Below, piece by piece: positions 51,148-64,000 of a stretch of 64,000 nucleotides of DNA. The notes under the pieces were generated by a model, which searched no databases, had not been told where the DNA came from, and saw nothing but the letters and a program-made list of their open reading frames with translations. The stretch lies in the IMG/VR virus record IMGVR_UViG_3300021963_000021, positions 186,001 to 250,000 of that record; one strand, written 5' to 3'. The translations under genes were made by a program, and so were the position numbers. The number at the start of each line of letters is the position of its first letter. The stretch's first letter is position 1.

Positions 51148-51152
51148 ATTAT

Positions 51153-51229: not shown

Positions 51230-51235
51230 ATAACT

Positions 51236-51309
51236 TGGCTGGGGATGATGGATTCGAACCACCACAGACGGAATCAAAATCCGTAGTCCTACCATTAGAC
51301 GAATCCCCA
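51236..51309 (-). tRNA. tRNA-Gln(TTG)
   Basis: Loop TTTTGAT. Confidence 0.93.
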
Positions 51310-51313
51310 ATAT

Positions 51314-51387
51314 TGGCACCGGACCAGAGACTCGAACTCCGACGAACGGTTTTGGAGACCGTCATGCTGCCATTACATCAGCCCGAT
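51314..51387 (-). tRNA. tRNA-Trp(CCA)
   Basis: Loop CTCCAAA; D stem ATGT/GCAT gives U11:A24. Confidence 0.93.
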
Positions 51388-51388
51388 A

Positions 51389-51742: not shown

Positions 51743-51768
51743 GATTGGGATCCTTTTAGCTATTTATC

Positions 51769-51855
51769 TGGTGGAGGAAGTAAGATTCGAACCTACTAGT
51801 CCCTAAGAAAACAGATTTACAGTCTGCCGCACCCCTCCAACTGTGCCGTTCCTCC
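51769..51855 (-). tRNA. tRNA-Tyr(GTA)
   Basis: Loop CTGTAAA, long variable arm. Confidence 0.95.
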
Positions 51856-52100
51856 ATAATAAGTTACGCACTCATAGTCTATGACTACCTGTCCTTCCAG
51901 TCAACGGAAGTAGAATGCGTGTATTGAAATGCTCTCCGCTACGCTGTCATGCCCGTTCCAAGGGTCAAGAGAAAGCATTTTAATACGCTACCATTTATAC
52001 TCCTGCGTTTTCGCCACAGTTTCATCCGGTAGGCCGCCCGTTTGCTGGATGTTTAACGTGCCCAGCGAGGTCCTCGTTACCTCTTTTTCACACGTAGTAC

Positions 52101-52137
52101 AAAATGAAAAACCCCAGGGTTTCTAATCCTGGGGTCC
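52101..52137 (-). terminator. attenuator-type intrinsic terminator ahead of the tRNA array
   Basis: ACCCCAGG-ATTAGAAAC-CCTGGGGT followed by TTTTCATTTT. Confidence 0.85.
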
Positions 52138-52159
52138 TTTGGGTAAGTTTGTGTTGCTT

Positions 52160-52297
52160 TTACGCTACACGATCCTCCCGGGACCCCTGAATCTCTGGTG
52201 TACGATCATTTGATAGACTAATCGCAGACCAATAAGAGGGCATAAAGCCGCCTTGTTTGGCTGAGCAATATTGTCTATGAAGTGATGTCGTTTTCAT
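52160..52297 (-). CDS. putative leader peptide (45 aa, contains all 20 amino acids)
   Basis: Not in ORF track; MKTTSLHRQYCSAKQGGFMPSYWSAISLSNDRTPEIQGSREDRVA*; AAGGA upstream; contains the antiterminator strand 52192-52181. Confidence 0.65.
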   Translation of the reverse strand: MKTTSLHRQYCSAKQGGFMPSYWSAISLSNDRTPEIQGSREDRVA

Positions 52298-52348
52298 TTG
52301 ATTCAAAATTTCCTTAAAAGTTACACGTTATCTCTAACGCATGTCCTT

Positions 52349-52459
52349 ATTGTACATTTATTTAGCCTGCTTGTCAACCCCTATTTTTCTTTCTGGAAAA
52401 ATTTCTGGTCTTCTTACAAACTATGCTTCTATTATATGTTCTTTTTATTTATGTGTCAA
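52349..52459 (-). promoter_or_regulatory. tandem sigma70 promoters
   Basis: TTGACA-N17-TATAAT (52459-52431) and TTGACA-N17-TACAAT (52377-52349). Confidence 0.85.
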
Positions 52460-52488
52460 TTAAAATATACCCAGATTATGTGGCATTT

Positions 52489-53061
52489 TTACAACATTTG
52501 GCTAACATCTTCGTTGAACCTTATGGTAGCAACGACCCTTAGTGTGTCATAGGGATTGTGTACACCATGCGGAACATTGATGCGTAGTATAGCAGGTTTT
52601 GTTAGTTCAAGTCTATGGACTTCTCTTACCGAACTGTGTGAGTTGCCTCCGCAGTCATAGACTGGATAGAACACATCTGGATCGTCATTAACCTTTTCGT
52701 AGAACAGTGTTGTGGTGCCTTCGCAGTGTTCTAAAGGAAAATTCATAGCAAAGGTTGGTTCGTACAAAGTCCAATCTTCGTCTTTGGCATCAATGTGAAT
52801 GAATACTGACTCAGGATTAGCAGGGTCTGTGATTTCCATACTGTTCTTTGGAATACAGAAAAAGATCAATTGTCTAATAGTAAGATTAAAGTTGTCCTTG
52901 AGCATCTTGACCAGGTCAGGAAGTTCTCTTTCGACTTCATCAGGGAAGTGGCACCACCAAAGAGTGTCGGTGTTTCCTTTGGTATTGCGAAAATCAATCA
53001 ATGCCTGTCTATGTTTTTCAAAGTCAGGTATGTTTATAAATTTTGAATATTTCATTCCCAA
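52489..53061 (-). CDS. 2OG-Fe(II) oxygenase/cupin-like protein
   Basis: IHID...NFP...HGV...R.VATIRF. Confidence 0.55.
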   Translation of the reverse strand: MGMKYSKFINIPDFEKHRQALIDFRNTKGNTDTLWWCHFPDEVERELPDLVKMLKDNFNLTIRQLIFFCIPKNSMEITDPANPESVFIHIDAKDEDWTLYEPTFAMNFPLEHCEGTTTLFYEKVNDDPDVFYPVYDCGGNSHSSVREVHRLELTKPAILRINVPHGVHNPYDTLRVVATIRFNEDVSQML

Positions 53062-54188
53062 ACGTGTGCGCCTTTTTTAGGTACAGCAAAATTCAAATAA
53101 GTTTCAATTTTAGCTAGATCTTCTTTGGTTTTCAACGAGCATAGTTCGTTAGCAAAGTGTAATTCAACACCCAAATCTAATGCTAGTTGTAGAAGTTCAC
53201 TTCTACGCTCTACATCGTCGGTTAAACAGTACATGCTACACAGCACAATACCATCAGGGCGTTCTTTTATGTAGTGTTCTAGACCAGGTTGCCAGTCCAT
53301 ATGTTCGTTTTCAAACTCATAGCTGTTGTAACTGATCTTGTTTTTGACACAATATGGTTCTATAATGGCACGCTGCATTGGTAAGGGGATGTCTTTTGAA
53401 AACTTAGAATTCCAGCCAGCATAGGTAATAAAGCTCTTGCCAGTGTAGTCACCGGTCTGTGTTACTTCGTAGTCGCCAGGCAAGCGCATAAAGCCCCCAG
53501 GCAGTCGACGACCCCATTCTTCGCCTTCGATAAGGATACGCATATCCATACTAACACGAGTGTAGCCTTCTTCGTTGTTGACATTTCCGTGTATGTGTTC
53601 TTGGAAGAACAAATGACTCTGACCAGGTTTGAGTGTAACTGGCCATGCGTGTTTTAAACACTCATCTTCAAACTGTTCGAGACTCCACTTTTCAGCTAGT
53701 ACACGTTTAGTGACTTCTCTACTGATATCCAGATCCATCATCCACATGGTGTTAGTGCCTTTAGCTTCTGTAAAAGGTGTCCAAATGGTTCGGCAACCAC
53801 GACCATTGCCAACAAAGATACCTTGGTGGAAGGCCAACCTACGACCAACTTTGGCCTGCTGTGGAATCACTACACGCAGAGTTCCTTGGCGTTGTATCAT
53901 GTAACGTTTGTTTTGTATACGTTGAGGTACAATACTTTGAGCAAACTCGTCAAACAGTTCCATAAAGTCTCTGCGTGAACAGGCATTTTGAACATGCTGG
54001 CTGACTTTAACAATCTCGGGAGGAGATAAAACTTCGTGTAGTGTCTCTAATTCTTTGACCTGTGGTGCGACTTCTTGTACGATCGACAGGGCCCATGCCG
54101 GCCAGTTGTACTTGTTTACATCATAGTTAAGGGTTTTATTATCCCAATGTTCCTGTAAAGGTGTTAAAGTTGCCATTCTATTCTCCAT
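53052..54188 (-). CDS. 2OG-Fe(II) oxygenase fused to a small alpha/beta domain
   Basis: FHQG, LKPGQ..LF..EH.HGN.NN.EGYTRVSMD.R; C-terminal DGIVL.S domain. Confidence 0.6.
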   Translation of the reverse strand: MENRMATLTPLQEHWDNKTLNYDVNKYNWPAWALSIVQEVAPQVKELETLHEVLSPPEIVKVSQHVQNACSRRDFMELFDEFAQSIVPQRIQNKRYMIQRQGTLRVVIPQQAKVGRRLAFHQGIFVGNGRGCRTIWTPFTEAKGTNTMWMMDLDISREVTKRVLAEKWSLEQFEDECLKHAWPVTLKPGQSHLFFQEHIHGNVNNEEGYTRVSMDMRILIEGEEWGRRLPGGFMRLPGDYEVTQTGDYTGKSFITYAGWNSKFSKDIPLPMQRAIIEPYCVKNKISYNSYEFENEHMDWQPGLEHYIKERPDGIVLCSMYCLTDDVERRSELLQLALDLGVELHFANELCSLKTKEDLAKIETYLNFAVPKKGAHVWE

Positions 54189-54200
54189 ATATGCTAATTA

Positions 54201-55301
54201 TCACAAGGAATCACCTTGGACAAAATTTTTAATTTCAGATACTGCTGCTTGATTTAGTAAAGTCGATTCTCCGCACTGGTGAGCGCACCTATCTAATCTA
54301 TTACAATTAGTCCAACTGTCTTTTATCTCGTTGAATATTTTACTGTTGACGATGTCTGATAGGGCTGTGTGATTTAAATCAATGCTTTTTAGCCCACCAT
54401 TGTTTTCTATCATTTCAAATAGTTTAGCTCTGTCTGGGTGAAGCTCGGGTTCGTAGCCATAGAAACGATCCAACAGCCATCCGCAGGGCAACACATAGCC
54501 TTCTGCTGACACACAGACTAGTCCAGTTTTCTGTGCCATACAATTTATGTTAGTGTTCTTAAGGTACGAATCGTAATCGCCAAATTTCTCTACGATTTTG
54601 TCATAGACATCATAGCCTCTGTTGAGGTATTTTTTATCAGTGGCAGGTTTAAGCCATCTTATGATTTTGTTATCCTTGTCGTGTACAGGACTTGCGTCTA
54701 TTTTTTTATGTGTTTTATCAATAAATCTAGAAGTGAACTTGACTACGAATCCTTTGAATCCTAATTCAGTACTGAGTTTTCTTGCTGCGTTGACTTGATG
54801 TTCATTGTGCTGGAATACGATATAACTCCATACAGCGTTGCCGCCTGCTTGTATAAAGTTGCGAGCGTTGTCCATAATTTTATCAAAGTCTGTGCCTATC
54901 CTGTAGAGATGATTAGTGTCTTCGAGACCGTCTACGCCAAAAAACACAGTATCCTGCGGTCTAAGAGTCTTGGCTAATTCTTTCCACCAAGCACTACTGC
55001 GAAGGCTTCCGTTAGTTCTTATGGTTATCTGTGCCTGAGACACAGAGTGAAAGTGTTTAACGATATCTATTAGATCAGGATGTACACAGGGATCACCGTA
55101 GGTGCCACACAATCTTATTTCTTTCATGTGTGCTAGTTCTTTTTCTTTGAACTTTTCTCCAATCCATTCAAGGCTGAGATCCACTAACGGTAGTGTAGGC
55201 CAAGTTTTTCCTCCATAGTAATTTCTAATACATTGAGGACAAGACGCATTACACCTTGTAGTGAGTTCAAATTCTATCTGTGTTAGTTTATCGTAGAACA
55301 T
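54201..55301 (-). CDS. radical SAM protein with C-terminal SPASM-like domain (start MFYDKL)
   Basis: CNASCPQC, GTYGDP, RTNG, DGL, C-terminal Cys cluster. Confidence 0.9.
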   Translation of the reverse strand: MFYDKLTQIEFELTTRCNASCPQCIRNYYGGKTWPTLPLVDLSLEWIGEKFKEKELAHMKEIRLCGTYGDPCVHPDLIDIVKHFHSVSQAQITIRTNGSLRSSAWWKELAKTLRPQDTVFFGVDGLEDTNHLYRIGTDFDKIMDNARNFIQAGGNAVWSYIVFQHNEHQVNAARKLSTELGFKGFVVKFTSRFIDKTHKKIDASPVHDKDNKIIRWLKPATDKKYLNRGYDVYDKIVEKFGDYDSYLKNTNINCMAQKTGLVCVSAEGYVLPCGWLLDRFYGYEPELHPDRAKLFEMIENNGGLKSIDLNHTALSDIVNSKIFNEIKDSWTNCNRLDRCAHQCGESTLLNQAAVSEIKNFVQGDSL

Positions 55302-56356
55302 TAACTGTAGTCTAGTAATTCGCCACGACGTCTTAGGTCTAATGTGGTACAATGAAAGCCGCCTGACAAAGTACTGGCGTGCCGCATAGGCAATGGAATC
55401 ACATCAAAGCCGCGTGATTCTAACATTTTAATCAACGGCAACTGCTCTTTGCCTACCATTATTGTTTTTGGATCTACACTTAGTACATTCATGCCTATGA
55501 ATCTACTGGTAGTTGCTAGTCCACCCGGGCACCATTTGCTCACAGGTATTTCTACAACATCGTCAAAATATATTTTGTCCCACTTTTCAAATATTTTAGG
55601 ACAGTTATTGGGATTTACCCTAGAGGAGTTTAATAACACAGTGTGATCGTTCAGTGGAATGATGGTACTGTCAAAGTGTCCGAAACTATAAATGTGTTCA
55701 GCCATGTGTATTCTATAGCCCAATGGTTCTAACAGATTCTTTAACCACTTCATACCCCATTTATTTCCTGTGTTAGAAATTTGAAACAGAATGTCTTTGC
55801 CTAATCTCACACAGTTAGGAGCATCAAACACTGGCTCTAAATCTCTCAGTGTTGGTTTTGATAGGTCTTCAAAGGTATAACTCTCATCAGGCAGTATAGG
55901 TTTAGGTGCCGACACCCAAGCACATCCGTCTTTGATTGCGTCTAACATGATATCGTGATAGGCCCTTGTTTCAAAATATCTAGCTCGCATACAACTAGGA
56001 GTTTCTATCATGATGTTGCCTAATGGCAGTAACAGATCTCTGGGGCACCAAGTATGATACCCAGAAGTCTTCCAATCAGGAGTGCCGAATTCAGCATCGT
56101 GATTTATGTCTTTAGGTCTATGTACAATAACTCCTAGAGACTTTAGTGTGTCAGACATGACTTCTAGATCTTCATTAGCTTCGTCTATCAGTGCTTTTGG
56201 AAATGGTCCTTCTAGTCCTTTGATCTGTTCTTGTGAATATTCAGTGTAGACCATGCTGTGTGTACTGATGTCAATGTTGGCCATGCGAGCACCAGTGGCT
56301 GTGCCGACAATAATTTCCTCTAACGGATCCCAATGATTGTGACTGGATATTTTCAT
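55301..56356 (-). CDS. amidinotransferase (glycine/inosamine-phosphate, StrB1-like)
   Basis: WDPLEEIIVG, CPRD, FDAPN, HFDST, GGFHC.T.D. Confidence 0.9.
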   Translation of the reverse strand: MKISSHNHWDPLEEIIVGTATGARMANIDISTHSMVYTEYSQEQIKGLEGPFPKALIDEANEDLEVMSDTLKSLGVIVHRPKDINHDAEFGTPDWKTSGYHTWCPRDLLLPLGNIMIETPSCMRARYFETRAYHDIMLDAIKDGCAWVSAPKPILPDESYTFEDLSKPTLRDLEPVFDAPNCVRLGKDILFQISNTGNKWGMKWLKNLLEPLGYRIHMAEHIYSFGHFDSTIIPLNDHTVLLNSSRVNPNNCPKIFEKWDKIYFDDVVEIPVSKWCPGGLATTSRFIGMNVLSVDPKTIMVGKEQLPLIKMLESRGFDVIPLPMRHASTLSGGFHCTTLDLRRRGELLDYS

Positions 56357-56357
56357 G

Positions 56358-57509
56358 TTACTCCTTTACTGTAACTAGATGGGTAAAACTTTTCTGTTTA
56401 AACCATCTTGTTAATTCTTCTTCTGTTATGCTGTAATTATTAGATAAAAAATCTAATAGGCTGTTGTTTCTTTCTGCTTCTTTAACAAATATGTTAAAGT
56501 TATGTTCTATGTCATTACGTATAGCTGCTTTATTTTGTTTTATACTTTGTAAGAATACTTCTGTGTTTAACACTATTAGATCAAAGCGATTGTTTTCGTT
56601 AGATAGATGTCCATACGGGAACATATATTCTTCAAATGTCCTTAATCCTTTTGACACTAGATATTGATATTGTTCTACTTCGCCTGCGAAAATAAAAGGA
56701 TGTCTGTTAACCACAGTGCGCCATGTCTTTTCTGTTAGAAATTTATAATCTGTAGCAGGCGGGTAAGCATTGCCTTCGGATATGATACTGAAACAGGTGC
56801 CGTAAAACACACTGGGATCTATCCAACCAGGATTTTGACACCAATCAGTTTCGTGTATTTTAGTTTCTAATAGCTCTGCTGAGGATAGCCTAGAGTAATC
56901 TTTGGCTGTTGAATACAGATCGTCTATGGATCTATCACAGTCATTTAAGAATTGATCATAGTTATACATATCAGCTAAGGCATTTCTACACCATTCTTTA
57001 TCTGACTCAGTCCAAGGAGGGAAAAAACTATACTCTGATCGATTCAGCAGGCCGCTGTTGTAGAATTTACTCAACAATACTATTCTATTTGATCTAGATG
57101 GTACGCCACCTAGGAACAAAAACTTTTCTGCTGTTGGATTCCACGTAGCAGTTTCTTTGTTATTGTAGCTTTGATAGACCATGTTTAAGTTGAAATCCCA
57201 AAACATGATCTTATAGTTTAGATTTCTTTCGTCTAACTTGTGTTGATAGTCATCGCACATGCCTACAATCAATACAAGATCATTTATATTTTTTGAATAG
57301 CAATAGTCTTGTATACGCTGTAACAGAGAATAGTATTCTTCGTTGTCTTTGTATAAGAATCCGTCAACTAACATTAGACCAATAATAGAATCGCAGCCTT
57401 CTTGGCTGGCAATATCTATTTCTTTTAACACTAGGTCTTTGGTTAGGTCTAAAATGTCTACAGATTTGGTAGTATATAACACTTCGAAATTTATTATCTT
57501 AGCTTTCAT
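56358..57509 (-). CDS. hypothetical, glycosyltransferase-like protein
   Basis: R..R..LL, FSIISE, TEKTWR, HPFI..G, GLRTF. Confidence 0.45.
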   Translation of the reverse strand: MKAKIINFEVLYTTKSVDILDLTKDLVLKEIDIASQEGCDSIIGLMLVDGFLYKDNEEYYSLLQRIQDYCYSKNINDLVLIVGMCDDYQHKLDERNLNYKIMFWDFNLNMVYQSYNNKETATWNPTAEKFLFLGGVPSRSNRIVLLSKFYNSGLLNRSEYSFFPPWTESDKEWCRNALADMYNYDQFLNDCDRSIDDLYSTAKDYSRLSSAELLETKIHETDWCQNPGWIDPSVFYGTCFSIISEGNAYPPATDYKFLTEKTWRTVVNRHPFIFAGEVEQYQYLVSKGLRTFEEYMFPYGHLSNENNRFDLIVLNTEVFLQSIKQNKAAIRNDIEHNFNIFVKEAERNNSLLDFLSNNYSITEEELTRWFKQKSFTHLVTVKE

Positions 57510-58410
57510 CTATGCTACCTAGGTGTAAAAATTTATGAAAGCTGAGTCTATTGGTATTTCCGCCTCTGTTGTATTCTTCCCAACCTGCTCCGCCAATGCC
57601 GAATAACACTGTACTGCTAGGATCAACTTTTAATTGTTGGCAAAATTCTAATTGTTTTTGTTTATAACGATCTGGTATAAAGTCTGGGCTGAATGTTTCA
57701 ATGAATTTCTTTCCTATATATGCGCCTAGACGGTTAACATATTTGCTTTTGTTCAGAACAAACATACTGTCATCATCATCTGTTTTAGTTAGACGCATAC
57801 CGACTCGAGCATGAGCAATAGGAAATGTTTTTGATAGACTAAACACTACGTCAGTTATACAGTTATAACTTAGATCAAACTCAATACCTGAACAAATTCC
57901 GTAATAAGCACAGTCTATTAACACAGGAATTTTCAACTGCTCACACTGTCTTAACACTTCGGCATGTCTACTATGTTGATTTCCGGTGTCGGCAAATGGT
58001 ATAGATATTACTACAGCATCGTTAGCGTCTAAAGGAGAGTTCTCGATGTGCTGCCAGTTGGGCCAACTGTTACGCCAAACCAATTGATGATACATATATT
58101 CGCCTTTGAAACATCTAAATCGTCTGGTATTGTTTTTCATGTAAAACTTATCAAATGATTCAGTGGTTCCGTTTGAATAACATCTATAGGTAAAATTATC
58201 CAAACCTTTGAAACTGTTTTTAGTACCAGATTTAATCCAATCTAAATACTCCGAACAGAAGTTGCCGACAACATTATCATCGTCCAACACATCGTGTACA
58301 TGTTGGAGTGATTCATTAAGCACAGCCATAGTATCAGAATCTCTAATAGCAAAAGAGTTTCCAAATTTTAAATGGCGCTTGTCCATAGGCAATTTTTCTT
58401 CACGGTCCAT
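57499..58410 (-). CDS. PLP-dependent aminotransferase-like protein (start uncertain)
   Basis: LIDCAY, FSLSK, RVGMR. Confidence 0.7.
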   Translation of the reverse strand: MDREEKLPMDKRHLKFGNSFAIRDSDTMAVLNESLQHVHDVLDDDNVVGNFCSEYLDWIKSGTKNSFKGLDNFTYRCYSNGTTESFDKFYMKNNTRRFRCFKGEYMYHQLVWRNSWPNWQHIENSPLDANDAVVISIPFADTGNQHSRHAEVLRQCEQLKIPVLIDCAYYGICSGIEFDLSYNCITDVVFSLSKTFPIAHARVGMRLTKTDDDDSMFVLNKSKYVNRLGAYIGKKFIETFSPDFIPDRYKQKQLEFCQQLKVDPSSTVLFGIGGAGWEEYNRGGNTNRLSFHKFLHLGSIDES

Positions 58411-58449
58411 ACTTGTAGTTATCTGCGCTGTTATTGTATAACTACAAGT

Positions 58450-59208
58450 ATGATATCGCAAGAAGCACTAGATTTTTATAAAAAGAACAAAGACCTGAAA
58501 TGGCGGATGTATCCGATCCCTGAAAATCTAACCACGGATATTGAAAAGGCAAATTGGATACTAAACGAAGCCGAGTTTGGTTGGATAGAATTAGATCTAT
58601 CTATCGATCTTGCTGGCTGGCAATTAGAAGCAGGTCAGTGTCGTGACTATTTTGTTGCCCACAGAGAAAACAGTTCTCATGGATGGCGCAGTTGTTGTAT
58701 ACATGGTATAGGTATTGATAAAACCGGTGCGTGGACCAACTACGGTTATACCGACGAAGCAGACGTTCCTTACCGATGGACTGATCTAGCATACCGAGCT
58801 CCCCAGGTAACCAACTTCTGGAGGAATAATTTCCCTGCTGTTGATTACCGAAGGATTCGATTTATGGATATCATTCCAGGTGGATCCATTAATCCACACA
58901 GCGACAGACCCGGGAATCTACCAGGCGAAGAAAACTTTGATGCTTTGACGTTTGGTGTTCCTGTTAACATAGCCGTGTTACATCCAGAAAGCTGTCACAT
59001 GGTACTAGAAGGATTTGGCACTGTGCCATTCCAAGAAGGTCAAGCATTTATTATCAACATACGACACAGGCATTCTGTGATTAATTTTTCAAATAAACAT
59101 CGTGTACACGTTATCGGCCACAGTAAAGGCTACGGTAAACGGTTAGAAGATTTTGCTAGTCTAGTAGTCAGGAGTTATCAGAAACAATATGAACATTATA
59201 AAGTATAA
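58450..59208 (+). CDS. Asp/Asn beta-hydroxylase-like 2OG-Fe(II) oxygenase
   Basis: IRFM...PGG.I.PHSD, HSVIN, R.H.I. Confidence 0.75.
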   Translation: MISQEALDFYKKNKDLKWRMYPIPENLTTDIEKANWILNEAEFGWIELDLSIDLAGWQLEAGQCRDYFVAHRENSSHGWRSCCIHGIGIDKTGAWTNYGYTDEADVPYRWTDLAYRAPQVTNFWRNNFPAVDYRRIRFMDIIPGGSINPHSDRPGNLPGEENFDALTFGVPVNIAVLHPESCHMVLEGFGTVPFQEGQAFIINIRHRHSVINFSNKHRVHVIGHSKGYGKRLEDFASLVVRSYQKQYEHYKV

Positions 59209-60400
59209 TAGAAATAACGAAAAAAAGAATGTAGTCTATTGTATGGTAGATAATTCTCGTGAATTCTCACCCAGAATTAGACAGATAATAAAAAACATAG
59301 CCGACTATACTGTGTCTAATCTGTATATAAAAAATATAGATCTCTTACAGGGAGAAGATGAAGATATACTTTTAGATATTGCCTGTGATTCTGGATACGA
59401 TCACGCTGTGGTGTTCAACATAGGAACAGAGTTTATAGGCGGCAGTGGCTTCTTTAATGTTGTTGAAAATCTAGTCCAGCAGGATTATTTTATAGCAGGG
59501 CATATACTAGACAGAAAAGATGCTTACTATGAACTACACCATCAGTGTTACATTGTTAATCTGCGCTACTATAAACGATTAGGCAGACCGGAGGTAGGTA
59601 ATCAAGAGCTAGGTGCGCAGCATCGTCAATGCGAACCCTGGAGAAGTCCAGAAAACTATCATGATGATTATACACCTATTTGGGTCTCCGGTGGTGACGA
59701 ACATAAAACATACAATCATAAACTACACGGCTGGAATATACTAGGTATAGCCTTTGAAGAAGATTACAAAGTTGTGGTATTCGATGATGAACTAAGACAA
59801 CACAAACGACATCACTATCCTGAGTCTAATAAGGATTTTAATAAATCCCTACAATGGTTACATTTTAGACAGAACTACTGTGCCAACGATTTTGTACATA
59901 CGGAAAACACTGATTTAGAACACGACATTGGAGTTAGTGATCTACAGCAATTAGTAATACCAGCCAGTGGAACTATGTATACAGATCTCTTGGTCGACGG
60001 AGGATCTGTAATAATGTATGATTACAATCAAAATTCTCTAGACTATTGGAATGAACACTCCCCGTCTGATTATCAATTAAAAAGAGTAGATCTATTAGGA
60101 GCAGAGTTTGACCTCGATGATTTATTCGATACCAGCATACCAAACACACTTATCAATCTAACAAATATTTTCTGTTATGAAGGAACCTGTGCGTTCGCAG
60201 ACATTGACTACAGAGTCTATAAAGAAAATCAACTGTTGGAAAAATTACAGTCACAATGCCCAGACGTATTTGTTAATTTTACAAATAGAGCAGCCATGGG
60301 ATTTATCGATGATTTGAAGTTGTTTGGGAAAGCCAAGGATTTTGAGTTGACAGATTTAAAGAAGGCCTTTAAGCCGACATACTGGTTTTTAAATCGCTGA
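59189..60400 (+). CDS. hypothetical protein (403 aa)
   Basis: Coupled ORF within the enzyme cluster. Confidence 0.55.
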   Translation: MNIIKYNRNNEKKNVVYCMVDNSREFSPRIRQIIKNIADYTVSNLYIKNIDLLQGEDEDILLDIACDSGYDHAVVFNIGTEFIGGSGFFNVVENLVQQDYFIAGHILDRKDAYYELHHQCYIVNLRYYKRLGRPEVGNQELGAQHRQCEPWRSPENYHDDYTPIWVSGGDEHKTYNHKLHGWNILGIAFEEDYKVVVFDDELRQHKRHHYPESNKDFNKSLQWLHFRQNYCANDFVHTENTDLEHDIGVSDLQQLVIPASGTMYTDLLVDGGSVIMYDYNQNSLDYWNEHSPSDYQLKRVDLLGAEFDLDDLFDTSIPNTLINLTNIFCYEGTCAFADIDYRVYKENQLLEKLQSQCPDVFVNFTNRAAMGFIDDLKLFGKAKDFELTDLKKAFKPTYWFLNR

Positions 60401-61523
60401 TTGCTTTATTGAAAAACTGTTGACTTTCTGACCAACTCGGGACATGTTGATAGTTTTCTATGTAGTTATGTAACCACGGATTCAAATCTTTTAGATCTTC
60501 GCTGCGTATTTCATTTAGCTTTCTATGAAAATTTATAAAGTGTCCAAACAGATCCTCTCCGTCTTGATCCATATAATTTAATACCTGTTCGTTGTTTATA
60601 TAAGATCTAACAGCGTCTTTGAACTCTTTAGGTGTATTCTTTAAACTTAGAAACACAGGATATTGTATTACCTGATGTGTTCTAATAAACAACGGATAAT
60701 AGTCTTTTATAAAATCGTCTAGTTCTTGAATCATGTTAGCATTATAGACACTGACTGCGCTGTGTATCATAATAGTTGAACTATTCAAAGGACGATGTCT
60801 AGCAAGGTCGTGCCAAAAGTTCATCACATCTACTACATTATCAAAGTTAGATCCTGATCTAATTACATTGTTTAATTTTCCATAGGCATCTATGCTGAGG
60901 GCTATTTTTATTTTCTTGGCACCTTCAACGGCTTTTAGCACATTACCACTTGGGATAGTAGTACAGTTAGTGCTCATTGATAACGTAATATTATCTAACT
61001 GTGGTAAGGATCCAAGAAACTCGTCAACATCATTGCTAATCGTAGGTTCGCCGCCATAGATATCTACCATCTCTATTTTGCTGATATCTAGTTCTTTGTA
61101 GATGGTATTTTTGTGATACTTCTTGTCGCTTAAGGTTTGTCCATAAAGAAGTTTCTCTTCTTCGTACCAAAGATGACTGTAAGGACTAGCACAGCTACGA
61201 CATTTGAGATTACATACATTGTCAAAAAATATTTCAGCAATCTTTAGAGTGTCAGAGGTATCAACACCAAACTCATCTATGGTCTTTTGACGCATAGATC
61301 TCATACCAGCAGCTTCCTCGGCAGGGCACTGGCAACCTATACCGTGCTGACCATTTAACATACGCTGTCTAAGATCTTCCATATACTTTCCTTGTCGCAC
61401 TTCTTGTATAGGAATTATCTTTTGAAACGGTCCCGAGTCCATGTATTGTCCACAGGGCAGAACTGTGTTATTGGCCTGTAAACTTATACCATTAAATGGA
61501 TACGGGCAGTAGGTGTTGCTCAT
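60369..61523 (-). CDS. radical SAM protein with N-terminal twitch/SPASM-like domain
   Basis: CNLKCRSC, GGEPT, STN, SIDA. Confidence 0.9.
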   Translation of the reverse strand: MSNTYCPYPFNGISLQANNTVLPCGQYMDSGPFQKIIPIQEVRQGKYMEDLRQRMLNGQHGIGCQCPAEEAAGMRSMRQKTIDEFGVDTSDTLKIAEIFFDNVCNLKCRSCASPYSHLWYEEEKLLYGQTLSDKKYHKNTIYKELDISKIEMVDIYGGEPTISNDVDEFLGSLPQLDNITLSMSTNCTTIPSGNVLKAVEGAKKIKIALSIDAYGKLNNVIRSGSNFDNVVDVMNFWHDLARHRPLNSSTIMIHSAVSVYNANMIQELDDFIKDYYPLFIRTHQVIQYPVFLSLKNTPKEFKDAVRSYINNEQVLNYMDQDGEDLFGHFINFHRKLNEIRSEDLKDLNPWLHNYIENYQHVPSWSESQQFFNKAISDLKTSMSA

Positions 61524-62014
61524 AGGTATTCTGTTACCAACAGCATGATCCTAGGAGTATGTCCGATGTTGGCAGCACCGTGTATATCAGTAGGGTCGTC
61601 GAACTCAAACAAATCGCCTTTTTTGTAATTGTTAATTAACTGATCTTTGTAGATGAATACATGACCGGCTTCGTAGTCTTGTAAAGGCATCCAGTATCTT
61701 TTACAGGGTTTATCGTGTGTGTGAGGATCGGCATGTATGGGCATAAACTGTCCGGGCATCATTTTTGTAAACCAACAGTGCGAAGGACCCTGACACCAGG
61801 GTGGGAACATTTTAATGTTTAAATCTTTTTCTTCATATACCCACCAGTTTACTGCTGTTAGATCATACCCGGCTTCTTTAGCTCTAGCATATTCAGCAAC
61901 TTCTTGTGCGTATGCTGGCGGCCAATCTCTAGGTCTTGCTTGACCTTCTTTTTCTAATATGGCTGTAATCCAAAGATCGTTGATCCAGCGGGCGTAGTTG
62001 TTTAACAGTTTCAT
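61520..62014 (-). CDS. 2OG-Fe(II) oxygenase-like protein
   Basis: PGQFMPIHADPH, HGAANIG..PR. Confidence 0.7.
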   Translation of the reverse strand: MKLLNNYARWINDLWITAILEKEGQARPRDWPPAYAQEVAEYARAKEAGYDLTAVNWWVYEEKDLNIKMFPPWCQGPSHCWFTKMMPGQFMPIHADPHTHDKPCKRYWMPLQDYEAGHVFIYKDQLINNYKKGDLFEFDDPTDIHGAANIGHTPRIMLLVTEYL

Positions 62015-63150
62015 GTCTTAAGACCTCTAATCTGATCTATGAAAAATATTTTACTATCTACTCTATTAGGATTCTGTTTTTTGTATTGTTCTATGTATTC
62101 GTAGAACAAAGGATTTGCGTCTTTTAATGTTTCTTGCCTCAGAAAATCTAACTTGGTATGTGCGTTTATAAAATGCTCGAAATGATCTTCGGCATCTTGA
62201 TCTAAGAAATTTAAAATCTCAGCGTATTCATTGCCGTATGCTTCGACGATGGGTCTGATTATCTTTTTATAATCAGCAGGCAAATGATTGATAGAAAGAT
62301 AGTTAGGCCACATCAGCAATCTTCTGGTATGTTTGAATCTAGGAAAATTCGTTTCGGTGAATGTTTTTATAGGTGCTAAAAGATTAACATTATATGCGCT
62401 GACTGTGGTATGTAATTGTATTTCAGTTAGCCCAGTTCGTTGATCAAATAGACTGTCAAACACTTTCATGATTTCGCAAGACGACTCAAAATCAGCACCA
62501 CTTCTAAAATAATCGTTGATGCCTCCATGACCATCTATACTCAATGTTATCCAAAGGTCTTTGGCTCCCCTAAAAATTTCCATCCATCTCTCTGAAGGGA
62601 CCACTGTACAATTCGTGGATATTCCTAGGAAGATATTTTTAAGTTTTCCCTGCTGTAACAAATCATACATGAAGTTTTCGGCTTTTTTGCTTAGGAGAGG
62701 TTCTCCTCCTGAAAGATTAATTTCAGCCAGTTCACTGTAATCTAAATTTTCTTGATATGTGCTAGTGACATACTTTGTGTCAATGAAAGTCTCACCGTAG
62801 AGTTCTTTTTCATCTTCAAATATTAAATGGCTGTTAGTGCTGACACAGCCTCTACATTTGAGATTACACACATTGTCAAAACTGATGTCTAAAACTTTTA
62901 GTTTAGATTTGTAGGTAACACCATATTTTTTAATATAGTCAGTACGTCTAGAATCTTTACCATGCTCTTCGTCATGGTAGCATTGAGCGCAGTTGGGAAC
63001 ACGCTCTCCATTGATCATTGCCTGTTTTACTTTTTCAAAATCTACAATGCCTGTGATTTCGTCGTGTGCCCAATAGCAACAGGGTGCTACTAGATTAGGC
63101 ACTACATTAAGACCGATCCACGGAAATGGACAATATGTATTAGAAGTCAT
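62011..63150 (-). CDS. radical SAM protein, paralogue of 60369-61523
   Basis: CNLKCRGC, GGEPL, STN, SIDG. Confidence 0.9.
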   Translation of the reverse strand: MTSNTYCPFPWIGLNVVPNLVAPCCYWAHDEITGIVDFEKVKQAMINGERVPNCAQCYHDEEHGKDSRRTDYIKKYGVTYKSKLKVLDISFDNVCNLKCRGCVSTNSHLIFEDEKELYGETFIDTKYVTSTYQENLDYSELAEINLSGGEPLLSKKAENFMYDLLQQGKLKNIFLGISTNCTVVPSERWMEIFRGAKDLWITLSIDGHGGINDYFRSGADFESSCEIMKVFDSLFDQRTGLTEIQLHTTVSAYNVNLLAPIKTFTETNFPRFKHTRRLLMWPNYLSINHLPADYKKIIRPIVEAYGNEYAEILNFLDQDAEDHFEHFINAHTKLDFLRQETLKDANPLFYEYIEQYKKQNPNRVDSKIFFIDQIRGLKT

Positions 63151-63965
63151 TAATAACTACCTAAGTTTCCTATGCCGATTTTATTTCTAAAATCGTCTGT
63201 GAATTTACAATCAATCCTTAGACCATATTCTTGCTCTAGGCTGTGTTCCCCGCCATGCCAATCTTGATCATTCCAGAAAGCAGCGTGTGAGTTCACATAG
63301 TGCTTATCTTGTGTGTCTGGATCCCATATATAGAATCCACGTTTTGTACGATATCTAATGTGTATAAATTCGTTGTTATGTGGTGTATAGTAGTCGTTCT
63401 CGAATACACCATTCTTGGCATCTAGATCTCTGTGTTCAAATGCCTTGCCGTTGTGATCGCATAAGAAGAATATCACACGACCTATTCTGTCTATGATATT
63501 CTGCTGCTGTAGATTTTCCACCCAACGTACTACGTTAGGAAAATGTTGGCTTTCTTCGGTCTTTTGGCGTTCGGAATTACGTTCATTCCAATCTCCCTCA
63601 TTCCACAAGAAGTAATATATGTAAGGGTCATTGGCACCTAGTGCTGATTTAAGATATCTAGTAAACAGATTTCTTTGTTTGTAGTCTTTGAAATCTTTAG
63701 GGTATATTTCTTTTCCCTGTACTTTGATAGGATGGTCGTCTGCTAATGCTAGGTATTCTTCATGTGCTTTGTATATTGGTTTCCAGTCCCATTTGTAACT
63801 GCCACGGCTTTGATCAAAGCCCGGCGCCATCCAAGTTCCTTCTTTGGCATAATCTCTAGCCAACGCAAGGCCTTTACATATCTCAGGATGTAAATCTATG
63901 AACCCTTGTATGTCCAAATAAGGGTCTAAATTAATATAAGGGTGTCCACCAATACCGCGAATCAT
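63150..63965 (-). CDS. 2OG-Fe(II) oxygenase-like protein
   Basis: EHRD, DQDWHG, LRID. Confidence 0.55.
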   Translation of the reverse strand: MIRGIGGHPYINLDPYLDIQGFIDLHPEICKGLALARDYAKEGTWMAPGFDQSRGSYKWDWKPIYKAHEEYLALADDHPIKVQGKEIYPKDFKDYKQRNLFTRYLKSALGANDPYIYYFLWNEGDWNERNSERQKTEESQHFPNVVRWVENLQQQNIIDRIGRVIFFLCDHNGKAFEHRDLDAKNGVFENDYYTPHNNEFIHIRYRTKRGFYIWDPDTQDKHYVNSHAAFWNDQDWHGGEHSLEQEYGLRIDCKFTDDFRNKIGIGNLGSY

Positions 63966-64000
63966 ACAACTACTTATTCGCTATATACGATATGAACAAC

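What the first reader, a model, noticed from the sequence alone, without database searches (positions are those of the whole stretch)
52489..63965. Biosynthetic-type cluster: 3 radical SAM, 5 oxygenase-like, amidinotransferase, aminotransferase
About 11.5 kb of tailoring enzymes sit in a phage. Aminotransferase plus StrB1-like amidinotransferase is the chemistry used to make guanidino-cyclitols and sugars (streptidine pathway). The product could be a modified virion glycan, a DNA/RNA hypermodification or a small molecule. No precursor peptide or scaffold enzyme is evident in the window.
Basis: partly seen in the sequence, partly recalled or inferred. Interest (0 to 1): 0.7.

Follow-up and report, generated by a model that had tools for sequence, protein, structure and literature searches.

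The report
Phage guanidino-sugar and radical-SAM tailoring island
A 364-kb T4-like freshwater phage carries a 26-kb island whose conserved core (aminotransferase, StrB1-type amidinotransferase, glycosyltransferases) most likely builds and transfers a guanidino-modified sugar, an expanded case of a phage module noted in 2010 with no function assigned in any paper I found.

Summary
The cluster is real, sits in a phage, and is larger than reported. The 12 ORFs at 52489-63965 are the first part of a tightly packed ~26-kb island that runs ~14.6 kb past the window end. The island holds 9 of the genome's 12 radical-SAM hits.

- **Confirmed in the window:** 3 radical-SAM enzymes, a StrB1-type amidinotransferase (profile E=2e-113 to 1BWD, catalytic residues invariant) and a fold-type-I PLP aminotransferase.
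- **Partly confirmed:** only 3 of the 5 "oxygenase-like" genes have HMM support.
two "unknown" genes fold as glycosyltransferases, one GT-B and one GT-A fused to a methyltransferase-like domain.

In 26 related viral loci the amidinotransferase keeps the aminotransferase (21/26), a small cupin (17/26) and the GT-B (16/26) beside it. The radical-SAM and oxygenase cassettes shuffle. Similar modules occur in Synechococcus phage S-SCSM2R and Campylobacter phage CP220.

The best reading is a nucleotide-sugar to keto to amino to guanidino-sugar pathway with transfer to an unknown acceptor. No cyclitol synthase, DNA-hypermodification enzyme or convincing precursor peptide was found. One 2OG oxygenase has HxG in place of HxD, so it is either a halogenase or an AspH-like 2-His hydroxylase. 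I rate it a new variant of a known but uncharacterised kind.

The parts
52489..53061 (-). 190-aa protein of unknown function, last gene of the minus-strand operon. The probable start is at 53055.
   Evidence: ORF. No Pfam, NCBIfam or PHROG hit. Only a weak language-model lead to cupin/2OG clusters, 0.90-0.91. Three orthologues in related loci.
53052..54188 (-). Two-domain protein. The N-terminal Fe/2OG oxygenase domain has HxG (H121-Q-G123 ... H200, R211). The C-terminal domain is LIC12192-like ('sporadic carbohydrate cluster').
   Evidence: TIGR04324 E=1.4e-18 (res 38-218) and TIGR04323 E=1.3e-11 (res 266-365), both below the family cut-offs. A weak profile alignment to the PtlH hydroxylase places G123 where PtlH has Asp. 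All 22 viral homologues have FHQG; 5 bacterial homologues have HxD.
54201..55352 (-). Radical SAM enzyme of paralogue family A. The probable true start is ATG at ~55301. It is a paralogue of genome gene 258329-259330.
   Evidence: PF04055 53.6 bits. CX3CX2C at residue 34. 32% identity to the second copy. Best NCBIfam hits are SPASM-type maturases far below their cut-offs. Homologous to CP220 radical SAM genes, E=5e-16. Start.
55301..56356 (-). StrB1-type L-arginine amidinotransferase (pentein fold), the anchor gene of the conserved core.
   Evidence: Family profile against PDB: 1BWD StrB1 E=2e-113 over residues 3-351, then HsvA, SxtG and AGAT at ~1e-75. Invariant D107, R126, D178, H227, D229, C336. 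52 related viral loci. A virus-specific clade in the tree.
56358..57509 (-). GT-B fold glycosyltransferase with no sequence-family hit, lying between the aminotransferase and the amidinotransferase.
   Evidence: AF2 model pLDDT 90.8. All Foldseek and VIA matches are GT-B enzymes, top Z 11.7 to 10 (T4 alpha-GT, Rickettsia GT, PimB', T4 beta-GT), which does not discriminate the acceptor. Present in 16/26 relatives next to the core.
57499..58461 (-). Fold-type I (class I/II-like) PLP-dependent aminotransferase. The probable start is at 58410 or 58386.
   Evidence: Invariant D183..Y186 and S208-x-S210-K211. Weak HisC/AspAT/CobD hits. Structure matches PF00155 clusters at TM 0.70-0.91. Within 6 kb of the amidinotransferase in 21/26 relatives.
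58408..58452 (.). Divergent 40-bp control region between the two operons, with a perfect 15-nt inverted repeat that covers both start codons.
   Evidence: Both RNA runs drop to ~0 depth at 58376-58542 while the DNA runs stay flat. The repeat is not conserved in relatives.
58372..59208 (+). Asp/Asn-beta-hydroxylase-type cupin Fe/2OG oxygenase with a canonical H176-x-D178 ... H triad. The probable start is at 58450.
   Evidence: PF05118 31.7 bits, above the 22.6 cut-off. Conserved triad. Present in 11/26 relatives, always divergent from the core operon.
59189..60400 (+). Two-domain protein: an N-terminal GT-A glycosyltransferase fold (res ~10-227) and a C-terminal class I SAM-methyltransferase-like Rossmann domain (res ~226-384).
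   Evidence: AF2 pLDDT 85. VIA top matches are the PBCV-1 capsid-glycosylating GT A64R (Z 11.0), STIV A197, the LH3 GT domain, ColGalT1 and Mimivirus R699. The C-domain matches EgtD, NodS and SgvM at Z 8-9.
60369..61523 (-). Radical SAM enzyme with an N-terminal twitch domain (N_Twi_rSAM family member).
   Evidence: NF033640 209.5 bits against a 170 cut-off. PF04055 36.8 bits. CX3CX2C at 104. 39% identity to 62011-63150.
61520..62014 (-). Small cupin oxygenase (164 aa) with H94-x-D96 ... H145. In relatives it is the commonest downstream neighbour of the amidinotransferase.
   Evidence: PF05118 21.9 bits, just under the cut-off. hhalign 99.9% to island cupins g259324 and g260950. Triad. Neighbour counts.
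62011..63150 (-). Second N_Twi_rSAM radical SAM enzyme.
   Evidence: NF033640 205.8 bits. PF04055 33 bits. CX3CX2C at 95.
63150..63965 (-). Conserved 271-aa protein of unknown function. It is only possibly cupin-like, with H178-x-D180 conserved.
   Evidence: 14 orthologues at 61-94% identity. Language-model lead to an Asp_Arg_Hydrox viral cluster, 0.95. Not backed by Pfam or hhalign.
63992..64000 (+). Start of the next island gene (231 aa), which runs off the window. The island continues to genome base ~264,627 (locus L003).
   Evidence: Beyond the window lie 6 more radical SAM genes (2 of them N_Twi_rSAM at 316 and 408 bits), 3 cupins, a PP-loop-like protein, a sugar-nucleotide SDR (LegB/RmlB-like) and a CSD-2OG fusion. 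ClpP and IF-1 then follow.

Best explanation
The window holds the first 11.5 kb of a ~26-kb hypervariable island in a 364-kb T4-like aquatic phage. The island consists of a conserved core pathway plus exchangeable tailoring cassettes.

The core most likely makes and transfers a guanidino-modified sugar, in four steps:
1. A host nucleotide-sugar is oxidised or dehydrated to a keto-sugar. The LegB/RmlB-like SDR of the island, or a radical-SAM dehydrogenase, would do this.
2. The PLP aminotransferase converts the keto group to an amine.
3. The StrB1-type amidinotransferase moves the amidino group of L-arginine onto that amine, giving a guanidino group and ornithine.
4. The GT-B and GT-A/methyltransferase proteins attach the sugar to an acceptor and possibly methylate it.

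The Fe/2OG cupins and the nine radical-SAM enzymes would act as oxidative or C-H tailoring enzymes. They come and go between relatives and so diversify the product.

The acceptor is not identified. I rank a virion or other protein slightly above a host envelope glycan.

Shown:
- the enzyme families and their catalytic residues;
- the conservation of the gene linkage;
- the presence of similar modules in two isolated phages;
- the presence of these genes in RNA libraries.

Inferred: the substrate class (sugar), the order of steps, the product and its destination.
For: - **Amidinotransferase.** End-to-end StrB1 homology with invariant catalytic residues.
- **Aminotransferase.** PLP-lysine motif and fold.
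- **Glycosyltransferases.** Two glycosyltransferase folds lie inside the core. The GT-A domain's best matches are virus enzymes that glycosylate capsid or collagen-like proteins.
- **Sugar-nucleotide SDR.** It has T-M-E and YxxxK motifs. Its best hits are LegB 4,6-dehydratase (120 bits) and RmlB (101 bits). It sits directly beside the core in several relatives (L040/41, L043, L048, L049, L061).
- **Carbohydrate-cluster domains.** The 2OG/LIC12192 protein resembles the 'sporadic carbohydrate cluster' families.
- **Linkage in 26 non-redundant viral loci.** Aminotransferase 21, small cupin 17, GT-B 16.
- **S-SCSM2R.** The homologous amidinotransferase is embedded among five annotated glycosyltransferases, a DegT/AHBA-type aminotransferase, a radical SAM gene and 2OG oxygenases.
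- **CP220.** The amidinotransferase sits between five radical SAM genes and two NDP-sugar-transferase genes.
- **Soluble enzymes, host precursors.** No island protein has a transmembrane segment and the genome has no sugar nucleotidyltransferase. This fits soluble enzymes working on host NDP-sugars.
- **Fe-S support.** The phage carries two A-type Fe-S carriers, which fits heavy use of radical SAM enzymes.
- **RNA libraries.** Two metatranscriptome runs hold contigs over the core genes, with a shared hole at the divergent intergenic region where DNA runs are flat.
Against: - No product or acceptor is identified.
- The aminotransferase is HisC/CobD-like. All sugar aminotransferases I know of are DegT-type instead.
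- StrB1's own substrates are phosphorylated aminocyclitols, not NDP-sugars.
- The SDR is 15 kb from the core in this genome and is within 6 kb of the amidinotransferase in only 4 of 26 relatives.
- GT fold matches at Z 9-12 do not discriminate acceptors. The top GT-B hits include the DNA-glucosylating T4 enzymes.
- The radical SAM families have no characterised member, so their role is pure inference.
- The RNA evidence rests on assembled contigs, which cannot exclude DNA carry-over.
Confidence: 0.5

Rival explanations
1. The island makes a free small molecule, an aminoglycoside-like guanidino-cyclitol or pseudo-oligosaccharide, as in the streptidine branch of streptomycin biosynthesis. The compound would act on the host, on competitors or on rival phages.
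For: - StrB1 is the closest solved relative.
- From my own knowledge, aminoglycoside clusters also combine aminotransferases, amidinotransferases, glycosyltransferases, SDRs and twitch-domain radical SAM enzymes such as BtrN.
- The authors of the S-SCSM2R paper called the homologous genes 'antibiotic synthesis genes' (PMC12801897).
- An actinomycete (Nocardia, L083) has an HxD homologue of the island's 2OG domain next to a StrB1-like gene.
Against: - No sugar-phosphate cyclase (DHQS-like) and no myo-inositol-phosphate synthase is in the genome.
- No kinase, phosphatase, exporter or self-resistance gene was recognised, and no island protein is membrane-bound.
- The viral amidinotransferases form their own clade, apart from the Streptomyces clade.
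- The bacterial StrB1-like loci share none of the island's other genes.
Confidence: 0.15
2. The island hypermodifies nucleic acid, either virion DNA (a glycosylated or guanidinylated base) or the phage's own 28 tRNAs next door.
For: - T4 alpha- and beta-glucosyltransferases are among the top four structural matches of the GT-B protein.
- The island abuts a 28-tRNA array.
- The island also contains a weak TilS-like PP-loop protein and a cold-shock-domain/2OG oxygenase fusion.
- Campylobacter phages that carry the module are known, from my memory of Crippen et al. 2019, to have fully substituted guanine.
Against: - No thymidylate-synthase-like hydroxymethylase and no TGT/DpdA was found in the genome.
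- No Tet/JBP hit either, but that control did not ring, so the test is inconclusive.
- The GT-B match does not stand above dozens of other GT-B enzymes.
- In relatives the module sits at other genome positions, away from tRNAs.
Confidence: 0.12
3. The radical SAM enzymes and Asp/Asn-hydroxylase-type cupins modify a peptide or protein, as in RiPP-like maturation or post-translational modification of virion proteins. The amidinotransferase would convert Lys/Orn-type side chains to guanidino groups.
For: - The best (weak) NCBIfam hits of several island radical SAM enzymes are SPASM peptide maturases.
- From my own knowledge, characterised PF05118 enzymes hydroxylate protein residues.
- The GT-A domain resembles protein-glycosylating enzymes.
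- A 45-aa ORF (52160-52297, minus strand) with two consensus promoters and a terminator lies right after the operon. In RNA runs its depth is roughly 7-25 times that of the island genes beside it.
- That ORF is conserved, with an in-frame indel, in the nearest relative L004.
Against: - All maturase hits are far below the family cut-offs (20-60 bits against 300-650).
- The 45-aa ORF is found in only 1 of 52 related loci, so it tracks the genome position and not the enzymes.
- No leader/core repeat pattern is visible.
- No collagen-like repeats occur in the proteome.
- I know of no amidinotransferase that acts on proteins.
Confidence: 0.1
4. There is no single pathway. The island is a hypervariable dumping ground of independent auxiliary genes, each acting on host metabolism on its own.
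For: - Outside the core, gene content and order differ in almost every relative.
- Many genes are recent paralogues.
- Published work describes such plastic regions, with glycosyltransferases and radical SAM cassettes, in T4-like marine phages (PMC7029224; PMC5332604).
Against: - The aminotransferase, GT-B, amidinotransferase and cupin core keeps its order and strand over 50-80% protein identity.
- The same functional combination recurs in phages with almost no sequence similarity, S-SCSM2R and CP220/CPt10.
- The genes are packed with overlapping stops and starts, and there is no gap over 40 nt across 26 kb.
Confidence: 0.13

Closest known systems
Radical-SAM + amidinotransferase module of Campylobacter phages CP220 / CPt10 (Timms et al. 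2010, PMC2853527)
   Same: - T4-like myovirus.
- A StrB1-like amidinotransferase (29% identity, E=1e-41, full length) is flanked by five radical SAM genes and two NDP-sugar-transferase-fold genes.
- CP220 radical SAM genes are distant homologues of island families A and C.
- The authors already called it an exchangeable module of unknown function.
   Different: - No PLP aminotransferase, GT-B, cupins or N-terminal-twitch radical SAM enzymes are annotated there.
- The host is a microaerophilic gut bacterium.
- The CP220 amidinotransferase is a very long branch of uncertain placement.
- The island here is about twice as large.
Synechococcus phage S-SCSM2R ORF301-310 ('antibiotic synthesis genes', PMC12801897)
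   Same: T4-like aquatic phage. The gene order is 2OG oxygenase, three glycosyltransferases (one GT25), aminotransferase, radical SAM, glycosyltransferase, small 2OG oxygenase, amidinotransferase (33.6% identity), then GT2. The logic is the same: amine formation, amidino transfer and glycosyl transfer.
   Different: - The aminotransferase there is DegT/AHBA-type, a non-orthologous replacement.
- Only one radical SAM gene is present.
- Its amidinotransferase groups with the bacterial clade, not the viral clade, which suggests a separate acquisition.
StrB1 / streptidine branch of streptomycin biosynthesis (PDB 1BWD)
   Same: It is the closest solved relative of the amidinotransferase: 44% identity to the S. 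griseus gene, E=2e-113, and about the same length (351 vs 348 aa). The chemistry is also an aminotransferase step followed by an amidinotransferase step.
   Different: - The phage has no cyclitol-forming enzyme, kinase or phosphatase.
- The aminotransferase class differs.
- The genomic context differs.
- The viral sequences form a separate clade.
Hypervariable region of T4-like cyano- and pelagimyophages, with LPS-type glycosyltransferases, radical SAM cassettes and Asp/Asn beta-hydroxylases (PMC7029224; PMC5332604)
   Same: - The phage lineage matches: structural proteins are 32-45% identical to Synechococcus T4-like phages.
- The gene families, the plastic organisation and the co-carried Fe-S assembly genes and ClpP all match.
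   Different: - Those papers do not mention an amidinotransferase/aminotransferase core in the passages I searched, and they interpret the genes as O-antigen modification without evidence.
- This phage lacks psbA.
- At 364 kb it is about 1.5 times the size of the largest isolated relative seen here (S-SCSM2R, 244 kb).
Chlorovirus PBCV-1 A064R capsid-glycan glycosyltransferase/methyltransferase
   Same: It is the best structural match of the GT-A domain (Z 11.0). From my memory, full-length A064R also fuses glycosyltransferase and sugar-methyltransferase domains and acts on the virus's own capsid protein using host nucleotide sugars.
   Different: Only 6% sequence identity. The match stands just 1-2 Z units above other GT-A enzymes. 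The virus is eukaryotic. There is no evidence here for a capsid acceptor.
HxG Fe/2OG enzymes: radical halogenases (SyrB2, WelO5, BesD, AdaV) and the 2-His hydroxylase AspH
   Same: The 2OG domain at 53052-54188 keeps the proximal His, the distal His and the Arg. It has Gly where bacterial homologues have the Asp ligand, and this holds in all 22 viral homologues. HxG/A is the published signature of halogenases and also occurs in AspH (PMC11186838 and PMC10947486).
   Different: - There is no detectable sequence relation to any characterised halogenase.
- Halide dependence is untested.

Membership tests
Amidinotransferase (GATM/StrB1) family, pentein fold | Full-length homology to solved amidinotransferases | tested here: met
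   The profile of 13 viral sequences matches 1BWD at E=2e-113 over residues 3-351. HsvA, SxtG and AGAT follow at E~1e-72 to 1e-75.
Amidinotransferase (GATM/StrB1) family, pentein fold | Catalytic Cys-His-Asp and arginine-binding Asp/Arg residues conserved | tested here: met
   D107, R126, D178, H227, D229 and C336 (GGxHCxT) are invariant. They align to the matching StrB1 segments. The identity of the StrB1 active-site residues is from memory of Fritsche et al. 1998.
Amidinotransferase (GATM/StrB1) family, pentein fold | Transfers the amidino group of L-arginine to an amine acceptor | not testable with these tools
   This needs an enzyme assay.
Radical SAM superfamily | PF04055 above the gathering score, plus the CX3CX2C cluster motif | tested here: met
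   Three window genes and six further island genes meet both criteria.
N_Twi_rSAM (NF033640), N-terminal twitch-domain radical SAM | Score above the curated cut-off of 170 bits over the whole model | tested here: met
   Window genes score 209.5 and 205.8 bits. Island genes beyond the window score 316.4 and 408.5. A fifth copy at genome 151.7 kb scores 345.6. The family has no known function.
Radical SAM/SPASM peptide (RiPP) maturases | Equivalog-level score to a characterised maturase family | tested here: not met
   The best hits are 20-60 bits against cut-offs of 300-650.
Radical SAM/SPASM peptide (RiPP) maturases | Co-distributed precursor peptide gene | tested here: inconclusive
   A 45-aa, highly expressed ORF lies at 52160-52297(-), adjacent to the island. 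It is found in only 1 of 52 related loci.
Fold-type I PLP aminotransferase (PF00155-like) | Schiff-base lysine in the S-x-S-K motif, Asp for the pyridine N, and the overall fold | tested here: met
   Invariant D183, Y186, S208, S210 and K211. TM 0.70-0.74 to clusters that are 100% PF00155. HMM scores stay below the family cut-offs.
Streptidine / aminoglycoside biosynthetic cluster | Cyclitol-forming scaffold enzyme (myo-inositol-phosphate synthase or a DHQS-like sugar-phosphate cyclase) | tested here: not met
   PF07994 and PF01761 give no hit in the whole 364-kb genome, and the controls rang.
Streptidine / aminoglycoside biosynthetic cluster | DegT/StsC-type aminotransferase, a kinase/phosphatase pair, and export or resistance genes | tested here: not met
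   The aminotransferase is class I/II-like. No such families were hit among the island proteins. No membrane proteins are present.
Glycosyltransferase, GT-B and GT-A folds | Predicted fold matches solved glycosyltransferases over the whole domain | tested here: met
   GT-B: Z 9-11.7 to more than 40 GT-B enzymes over residues 1-360. GT-A: Z 9-11 over residues 10-227. No CAZy family can be assigned by sequence.
TIGR04324 'sporadic carbohydrate cluster' 2OG-Fe(II) oxygenase | Score above the 150-bit cut-off and a canonical HxD...H triad | tested here: not met
   It scores 67.4 bits. The viral clade has HxG where the three bona fide cyanobacterial members and two weaker bacterial homologues have HxD. 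It is related to the family but is not a member.
Fe/2OG radical halogenases | HxG/A in place of HxD/E, with the distal His and the 2OG-binding Arg retained | tested here: met
   H121-Q-G123, H200 and R211 are invariant in 13 aligned sequences and seen in all 22 viral homologues. The feature is not sufficient, because AspH is an HxG hydroxylase.
Fe/2OG radical halogenases | Halide-dependent C-H halogenation; halide pocket in the structure | not testable with these tools
This needs an assay or a crystal structure.
Phage DNA hypermodification systems (hmC/hmU glycosylation, TET-type, 7-deazaguanine) | Enabling enzyme present: ThyA-like hydroxymethylase, Tet/JBP oxygenase or DpdA/TGT | tested here: not met
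   PF00303 and PF01702 give no hit, with good controls. PF12851 gives no hit, but its control did not ring, so that part is inconclusive.
CP220/CPt10-type radical SAM + amidinotransferase phage module | Homologous amidinotransferase flanked by several radical SAM genes and NDP-sugar transferases in a T4-like phage | tested here: met
   Homology of the radical SAM genes is distant (21-25% identity, E down to 5e-16).

The most novel reading that the evidence does not exclude
A virus-specific enzyme set builds a sugar unknown in biology: arginine-derived guanidino, possibly also halogenated by the HxG Fe/2OG domain and remodelled by N-terminal-twitch radical SAM enzymes. The phage attaches it to its own virion or to the host surface. 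This would be the first function for the radical-SAM/amidinotransferase modules of T4-like phages. If the HxG enzyme uses halide, it would also be the first Fe/2OG halogenase known from a virus.
Probability: 0.2. Interest if true: 0.85.

Novelty: new variant of a known kind. Interest (0 to 1): 0.62.

Why it matters
Clusters of radical SAM genes with an amidinotransferase were noted in Campylobacter phages in 2010. Radical SAM, glycosyltransferase and hydroxylase cassettes have since been seen in many marine T4-like phages. None of the papers I read assigns them a function.

This island ties those observations together in three ways:
- It defines a conserved, virus-specific core of PLP aminotransferase, GT-B, StrB1-type amidinotransferase and cupin.
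- It shows that similar modules occur in two cultured phages, S-SCSM2R on Synechococcus WH7803 and CP220 on Campylobacter. The question can therefore be tested with existing isolates.
- It gives concrete predictions: an arginine-derived +42 Da amidino group on an amino-sugar, ornithine release, and glycosyl transfer.

If the product decorates virions or host envelopes, it bears on host range and superinfection exclusion in abundant aquatic phages. If the HxG oxygenase or the N-terminal-twitch radical SAM enzymes have new activities, they are of interest for enzymology.

Tried and rejected
**Searches that returned nothing**
- Megablast of the 11.5 kb against 50,697 phage records: no match.
- Sequence or profile searches of PDB for the two unknown core proteins: nothing. 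Fold prediction solved them.
- PDB sequence searches for the N_Twi_rSAM and 2OG proteins: nothing useful.
- Rfam on the 52-kb intergenic RNA: no family.

**Leads that were not backed**
- 63150-63965 as a fifth oxygenase: hhalign against the Asp_Arg_Hydrox family gave 0.3% and Pfam gave nothing. It is kept as a lead only.
- 52489-53061: no assignment.
- T4 late-promoter motif TATAAATA: 1 site against 4.6 expected, so it is uninformative.
- The 15-nt inverted repeat at the divergent start codons is not conserved in relatives.

**Enabling or marker genes sought in the genome and not found**
- Collagen-like (G-X-Y)n acceptors: none in the proteome.
- ThyA-like, TGT/DpdA, sugar nucleotidyltransferase, DHQS-like cyclase, MIPS and psbA: none, all with ringing controls.
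- Tet_JBP: no hit, but its control did not ring.
- Transmembrane segments in island proteins: none.

**Other**
- Bacterial StrB1-like loci (80 fetched) do not share the island's neighbourhood. The six closest 'MAG' hits look like phage contigs.
- An all-against-all hhalign of the island families timed out. It was rerun on a subset.
- Complex prediction was not used, because no protein-protein binding is claimed.

Full report
**What is there.** The window is bases 186001-250000 of a 363,943-bp IMG/VR virus record that CheckV rates complete. Its structural genes are T4-like. A baseplate/protease protein is 32-45% identical to those of Synechococcus T4-like cyanophages. The genome has no psbA, so the host is open. 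Near-identical DNA occurs in many freshwater, riverine, estuarine and 'marine' metagenomes from several studies. A 28-tRNA array at 46111-51855 lies just before the finding. Between 52489 and 63965 there are 12 ORFs with overlapping or abutting ends.

**The cluster is twice as long as reported.** Fetching the DNA beyond the window (L003) shows the same kind of genes continuing to about genome base 264,627.
- Six more radical SAM enzymes.
- Three more cupins.
- A weak PP-loop protein.
- A LegB/RmlB-like sugar-nucleotide SDR.
- A cold-shock-domain/2OG-oxygenase fusion.

ClpP and an IF-1 homologue follow. Nine of the genome's twelve PF04055 hits lie in these 26 kb, and all nine carry CX3CX2C. No intergenic gap over 40 nt occurs in the island. 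Its GC content (39.1%) is a little below the genome's (41.2%) but not extreme.

The island is rich in paralogues.
- Radical SAM family A has 2 copies.
- The N-terminal-twitch family NF033640 has 4 copies in the island plus 1 elsewhere, all above the curated cut-off.
- Radical SAM family C has 3 copies.
- The small cupin family has 3-4 copies.
- Two further pairs have unknown function.

**Gene by gene in the window.**
- *Amidinotransferase (55301-56356).* This is the most secure call. A profile of 13 viral sequences matches StrB1 (1BWD) at E=2e-113 from end to end. HsvA, SxtG and AGAT follow at about 1e-75. D107, R126, D178, H227, D229 and C336 are invariant.
- *Aminotransferase (57499-58461).* HMM hits are weak. 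It does have the invariant D..Y and S-x-S-K motifs of fold-type I PLP enzymes and a predicted structure matching PF00155 families.
- *The two genes with no sequence-family hit.* Both were folded from alignments of their orthologues.
  - 56358-57509 (pLDDT 90.8) is a GT-B glycosyltransferase.
  - 59189-60400 (pLDDT 85) has a GT-A domain. Its best matches are the capsid-glycosylating A64R of chlorovirus PBCV-1, STIV A197, the glycosyltransferase domain of lysyl hydroxylase LH3, ColGalT1 and Mimivirus R699. A class I methyltransferase-like domain follows.
- *Oxygenases.* Three have HMM support and two more are only leads; the observation check gives the details.

**Conservation.** The amidinotransferase has 52 related loci in IMG/VR at 38-81% identity. 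I called ORFs in each locus and compared them with the genome. A core recurs in the same order and orientation:
- Asp/Asn-hydroxylase cupin (divergent);
- aminotransferase;
- GT-B;
- often a twitch-type radical SAM and a ~190-aa protein;
- amidinotransferase;
- small cupin;
- the 2OG/LIC12192 protein.

Within 6 kb of the amidinotransferase, 26 non-redundant loci with full flanks contain these genes:

| Gene | Loci (of 26) |
|---|---|
| Aminotransferase | 21 |
| Small cupin | 17 |
| GT-B | 16 |
| Twitch radical SAM | 11 |
| Divergent cupin | 11 |
| 2OG/LIC12192 protein | 10 |
| GT-A/MT protein | 9 |

More distant relatives keep only the aminotransferase and the amidinotransferase, sometimes with the SDR or the 2OG protein. 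Everything else is reshuffled.

In a FastTree of 110 amidinotransferases, the viral sequences form a clade (SH-like support 98). It is separate from a bacterial clade that includes the Streptomyces streptomycin-type genes. The few 'MAG' sequences inside the viral clade sit on contigs carrying phage genes.

**Similar modules in cultured phages.**
- *Synechococcus phage S-SCSM2R.* The homologous amidinotransferase (33.6% identity) lies in a run of genes. The order is 2OG oxygenase, three glycosyltransferases (one GT25), a DegT/AHBA-type aminotransferase, a radical SAM gene, another glycosyltransferase, a small 2OG oxygenase, the amidinotransferase and a GT2. Its authors called three of these 'antibiotic synthesis genes' and left the reason open (PMC12801897).
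- *Campylobacter phage CP220.* The amidinotransferase (29% identity) is preceded by four radical SAM genes. Another radical SAM gene and two NDP-sugar-transferase-fold genes follow it. Timms et al. described this in 2010 as an exchangeable module of five radical SAM genes plus an amidinotransferase, of unknown role (PMC2853527).
- *Metagenomic T4-like phages.* Plastic regions with glycosyltransferases, radical SAM cassettes, Asp/Asn hydroxylases, Fe-S assembly genes and ClpP are reported in marine T4-like phages (PMC7029224; PMC5332604). This genome also has two A-type Fe-S carriers.

The kind of thing is therefore known. In the papers I found, its function is not.

**Mechanism.** Three independent lineages combine amine formation, amidino transfer and glycosyl transfer. 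The aminotransferase is even replaced by a non-orthologous one in S-SCSM2R. This argues for one pathway that puts a guanidino group on a sugar-like scaffold and then transfers it.

The SDR has the GxxGxxG, T-M-E and YxxxK motifs. Its best matches are 4,6-dehydratases and 4-epimerases. From established knowledge of the family, Thr-x-Glu is the dehydratase/decarboxylase pattern. It would supply an NDP-4-keto sugar.

The genome has no sugar nucleotidyltransferase and the island has no membrane proteins. The enzymes would therefore act in the cytoplasm on host NDP-sugars.

I cannot tell the acceptor. The GT-A domain leans towards protein. The GT-B domain is uninformative: T4 DNA glucosyltransferases and lipid or LPS enzymes score alike.

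For DNA hypermodification, no ThyA-like or TGT/DpdA enzyme was found, and the Tet_JBP search was uninformative because its control did not ring.

**An unexpected detail: HxG in the 2OG domain.** The 2OG domain of 53052-54188 carries F-H-Q-G. The PhyH-type hydroxylase PtlH has F-H-Q-D-G at this position (weak profile alignment, E=0.078). Four cyanobacterial homologues, three of them bona fide TIGR04324 members, and a Nocardia homologue have HxD there.

All 22 viral homologues have Gly at this position, and those that cover the distal motifs keep the distal His and the Arg. Loss of the carboxylate ligand is the published signature of Fe/2OG halogenases (PMC11186838). It also occurs in the hydroxylase AspH (PMC10947486). 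The enzyme is therefore either a halogenase or a two-His hydroxylase. The other island cupins have the canonical HxD.

**Expression.** Two metatranscriptome runs hold contigs over most of 54.2-59.2 kb. Both fall to about zero at the 40-bp divergent region (58376-58542), where the DNA runs are flat. This suggests real transcripts, but contig data cannot prove it.

**A highly expressed element next to the island.** The 362-nt gap between the island and the tRNA array has much higher depth in two RNA runs than the island genes to its right, 40-50 against 0-6. On the minus strand it contains:
- the two best sigma-70-type promoters of the region (12/12 and 11/12 matches);
- a 45-aa ORF;
- a strong terminator hairpin.

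The RNA folds with z=-5.2. It is conserved only in the nearest relative, L004. That is weak support for a precursor-peptide reading.

**Verdict.** The interpretation as a sugar or glycan tailoring pathway with guanidinylation is the best supported (about 0.5). The cyclitol, nucleic-acid and peptide readings are weaker but not excluded.

It is a new, expanded variant of a known but uncharacterised phage module. Cultured phages with the same logic exist, which makes a question open since 2010 directly testable.

Noticed in passing
window 52100-52460 (minus strand); ORF 52160-52297: The 362-nt gap between the island and the tRNA array holds two near-perfect sigma-70 promoters (52459-52431 at 12/12; 52377-52349 at 11/12), a 45-aa ORF with an RBS, and a 12-bp GC-rich terminator hairpin (~52138-52102). 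The RNA is strongly structured (z=-5.2). In two metatranscriptomes its depth is 40-50, against 0-6 on the island genes beside it. There is no Rfam match. It is conserved only in L004 (74% aa identity, in-frame indel). It may be an sRNA or a small protein.
   Followed up: partly
window 58408-58452: A perfect 15-nt inverted repeat (CATACTTGTAGTTAT / ATAACTACAAGTATG, 15 nt apart) spans the start codons of the two divergent operons. It is not conserved in relatives, although the ~40-bp divergent gap is.
   Followed up: partly
window 46111-51855: An array of 28 tRNA genes, all on the minus strand, lies directly beside the island. It includes an unusual tRNA-Asn with anticodon ATT.
   Followed up: no
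window 24539-24859 (minus) and genome 176754-177059: Two A-type Fe-S cluster carrier genes (PF01521, 70 and 62 bits). They probably support the many phage radical SAM enzymes. In relative L014 both homologues lie next to the island.
   Followed up: partly
L003 16584-16799 (genome 264584-264799) and L003 16799-17371: A phage-encoded translation initiation factor IF-1 homologue (PF01176, 84.5 bits) lies immediately before a ClpP protease gene at the far end of the island.
   Followed up: partly
L003 14182-14997 (genome 262182-262997): A fusion of a cold-shock (nucleic-acid-binding) domain with a prolyl-hydroxylase-type 2OG oxygenase. This hints at an RNA- or DNA-directed or ribosome-associated oxidation.
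   Followed up: no
L056, L057, L058, L061, L071 (GTDB genome contigs): Contigs binned as Puniceispirillum, Verrucomicrobiales, Gammaproteobacteria and Chloroflexota NAT137 MAGs, or assembled with Synechococcus lacustris Tous, fall inside the viral amidinotransferase clade. Most also carry this module or the phage's genes, so they are probably phage contigs mis-binned into MAGs. The NAT137 genome has 9 N_Twi_rSAM paralogues, 7 of them within 25 kb.
   Followed up: partly
genome 16.4-20 kb (outside the window): A second glycosyltransferase region with one GT2 and two GT25 hits, one of them in a 528-aa ORF that also carries an SDR domain. In relatives L034/L035 the aminotransferase/amidinotransferase module is inserted close to the homologous region.
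   Followed up: no
L083 11842-12588 (Nocardia sp.): A canonical HxD homologue of the island's 2OG domain lies about 0.8 kb downstream of a StrB1-like amidinotransferase in an actinomycete. The oxygenase/amidinotransferase pairing therefore also exists in bacteria.
   Followed up: no
window 15946-24180 and genome 120185-134875: The phage encodes very large proteins: 2744 aa in the window, and 4896, 2608, 2087, 2028 and 1951 aa elsewhere. None has collagen-like repeats. They are candidate fibres or surface proteins and possible glycan acceptors.
   Followed up: no
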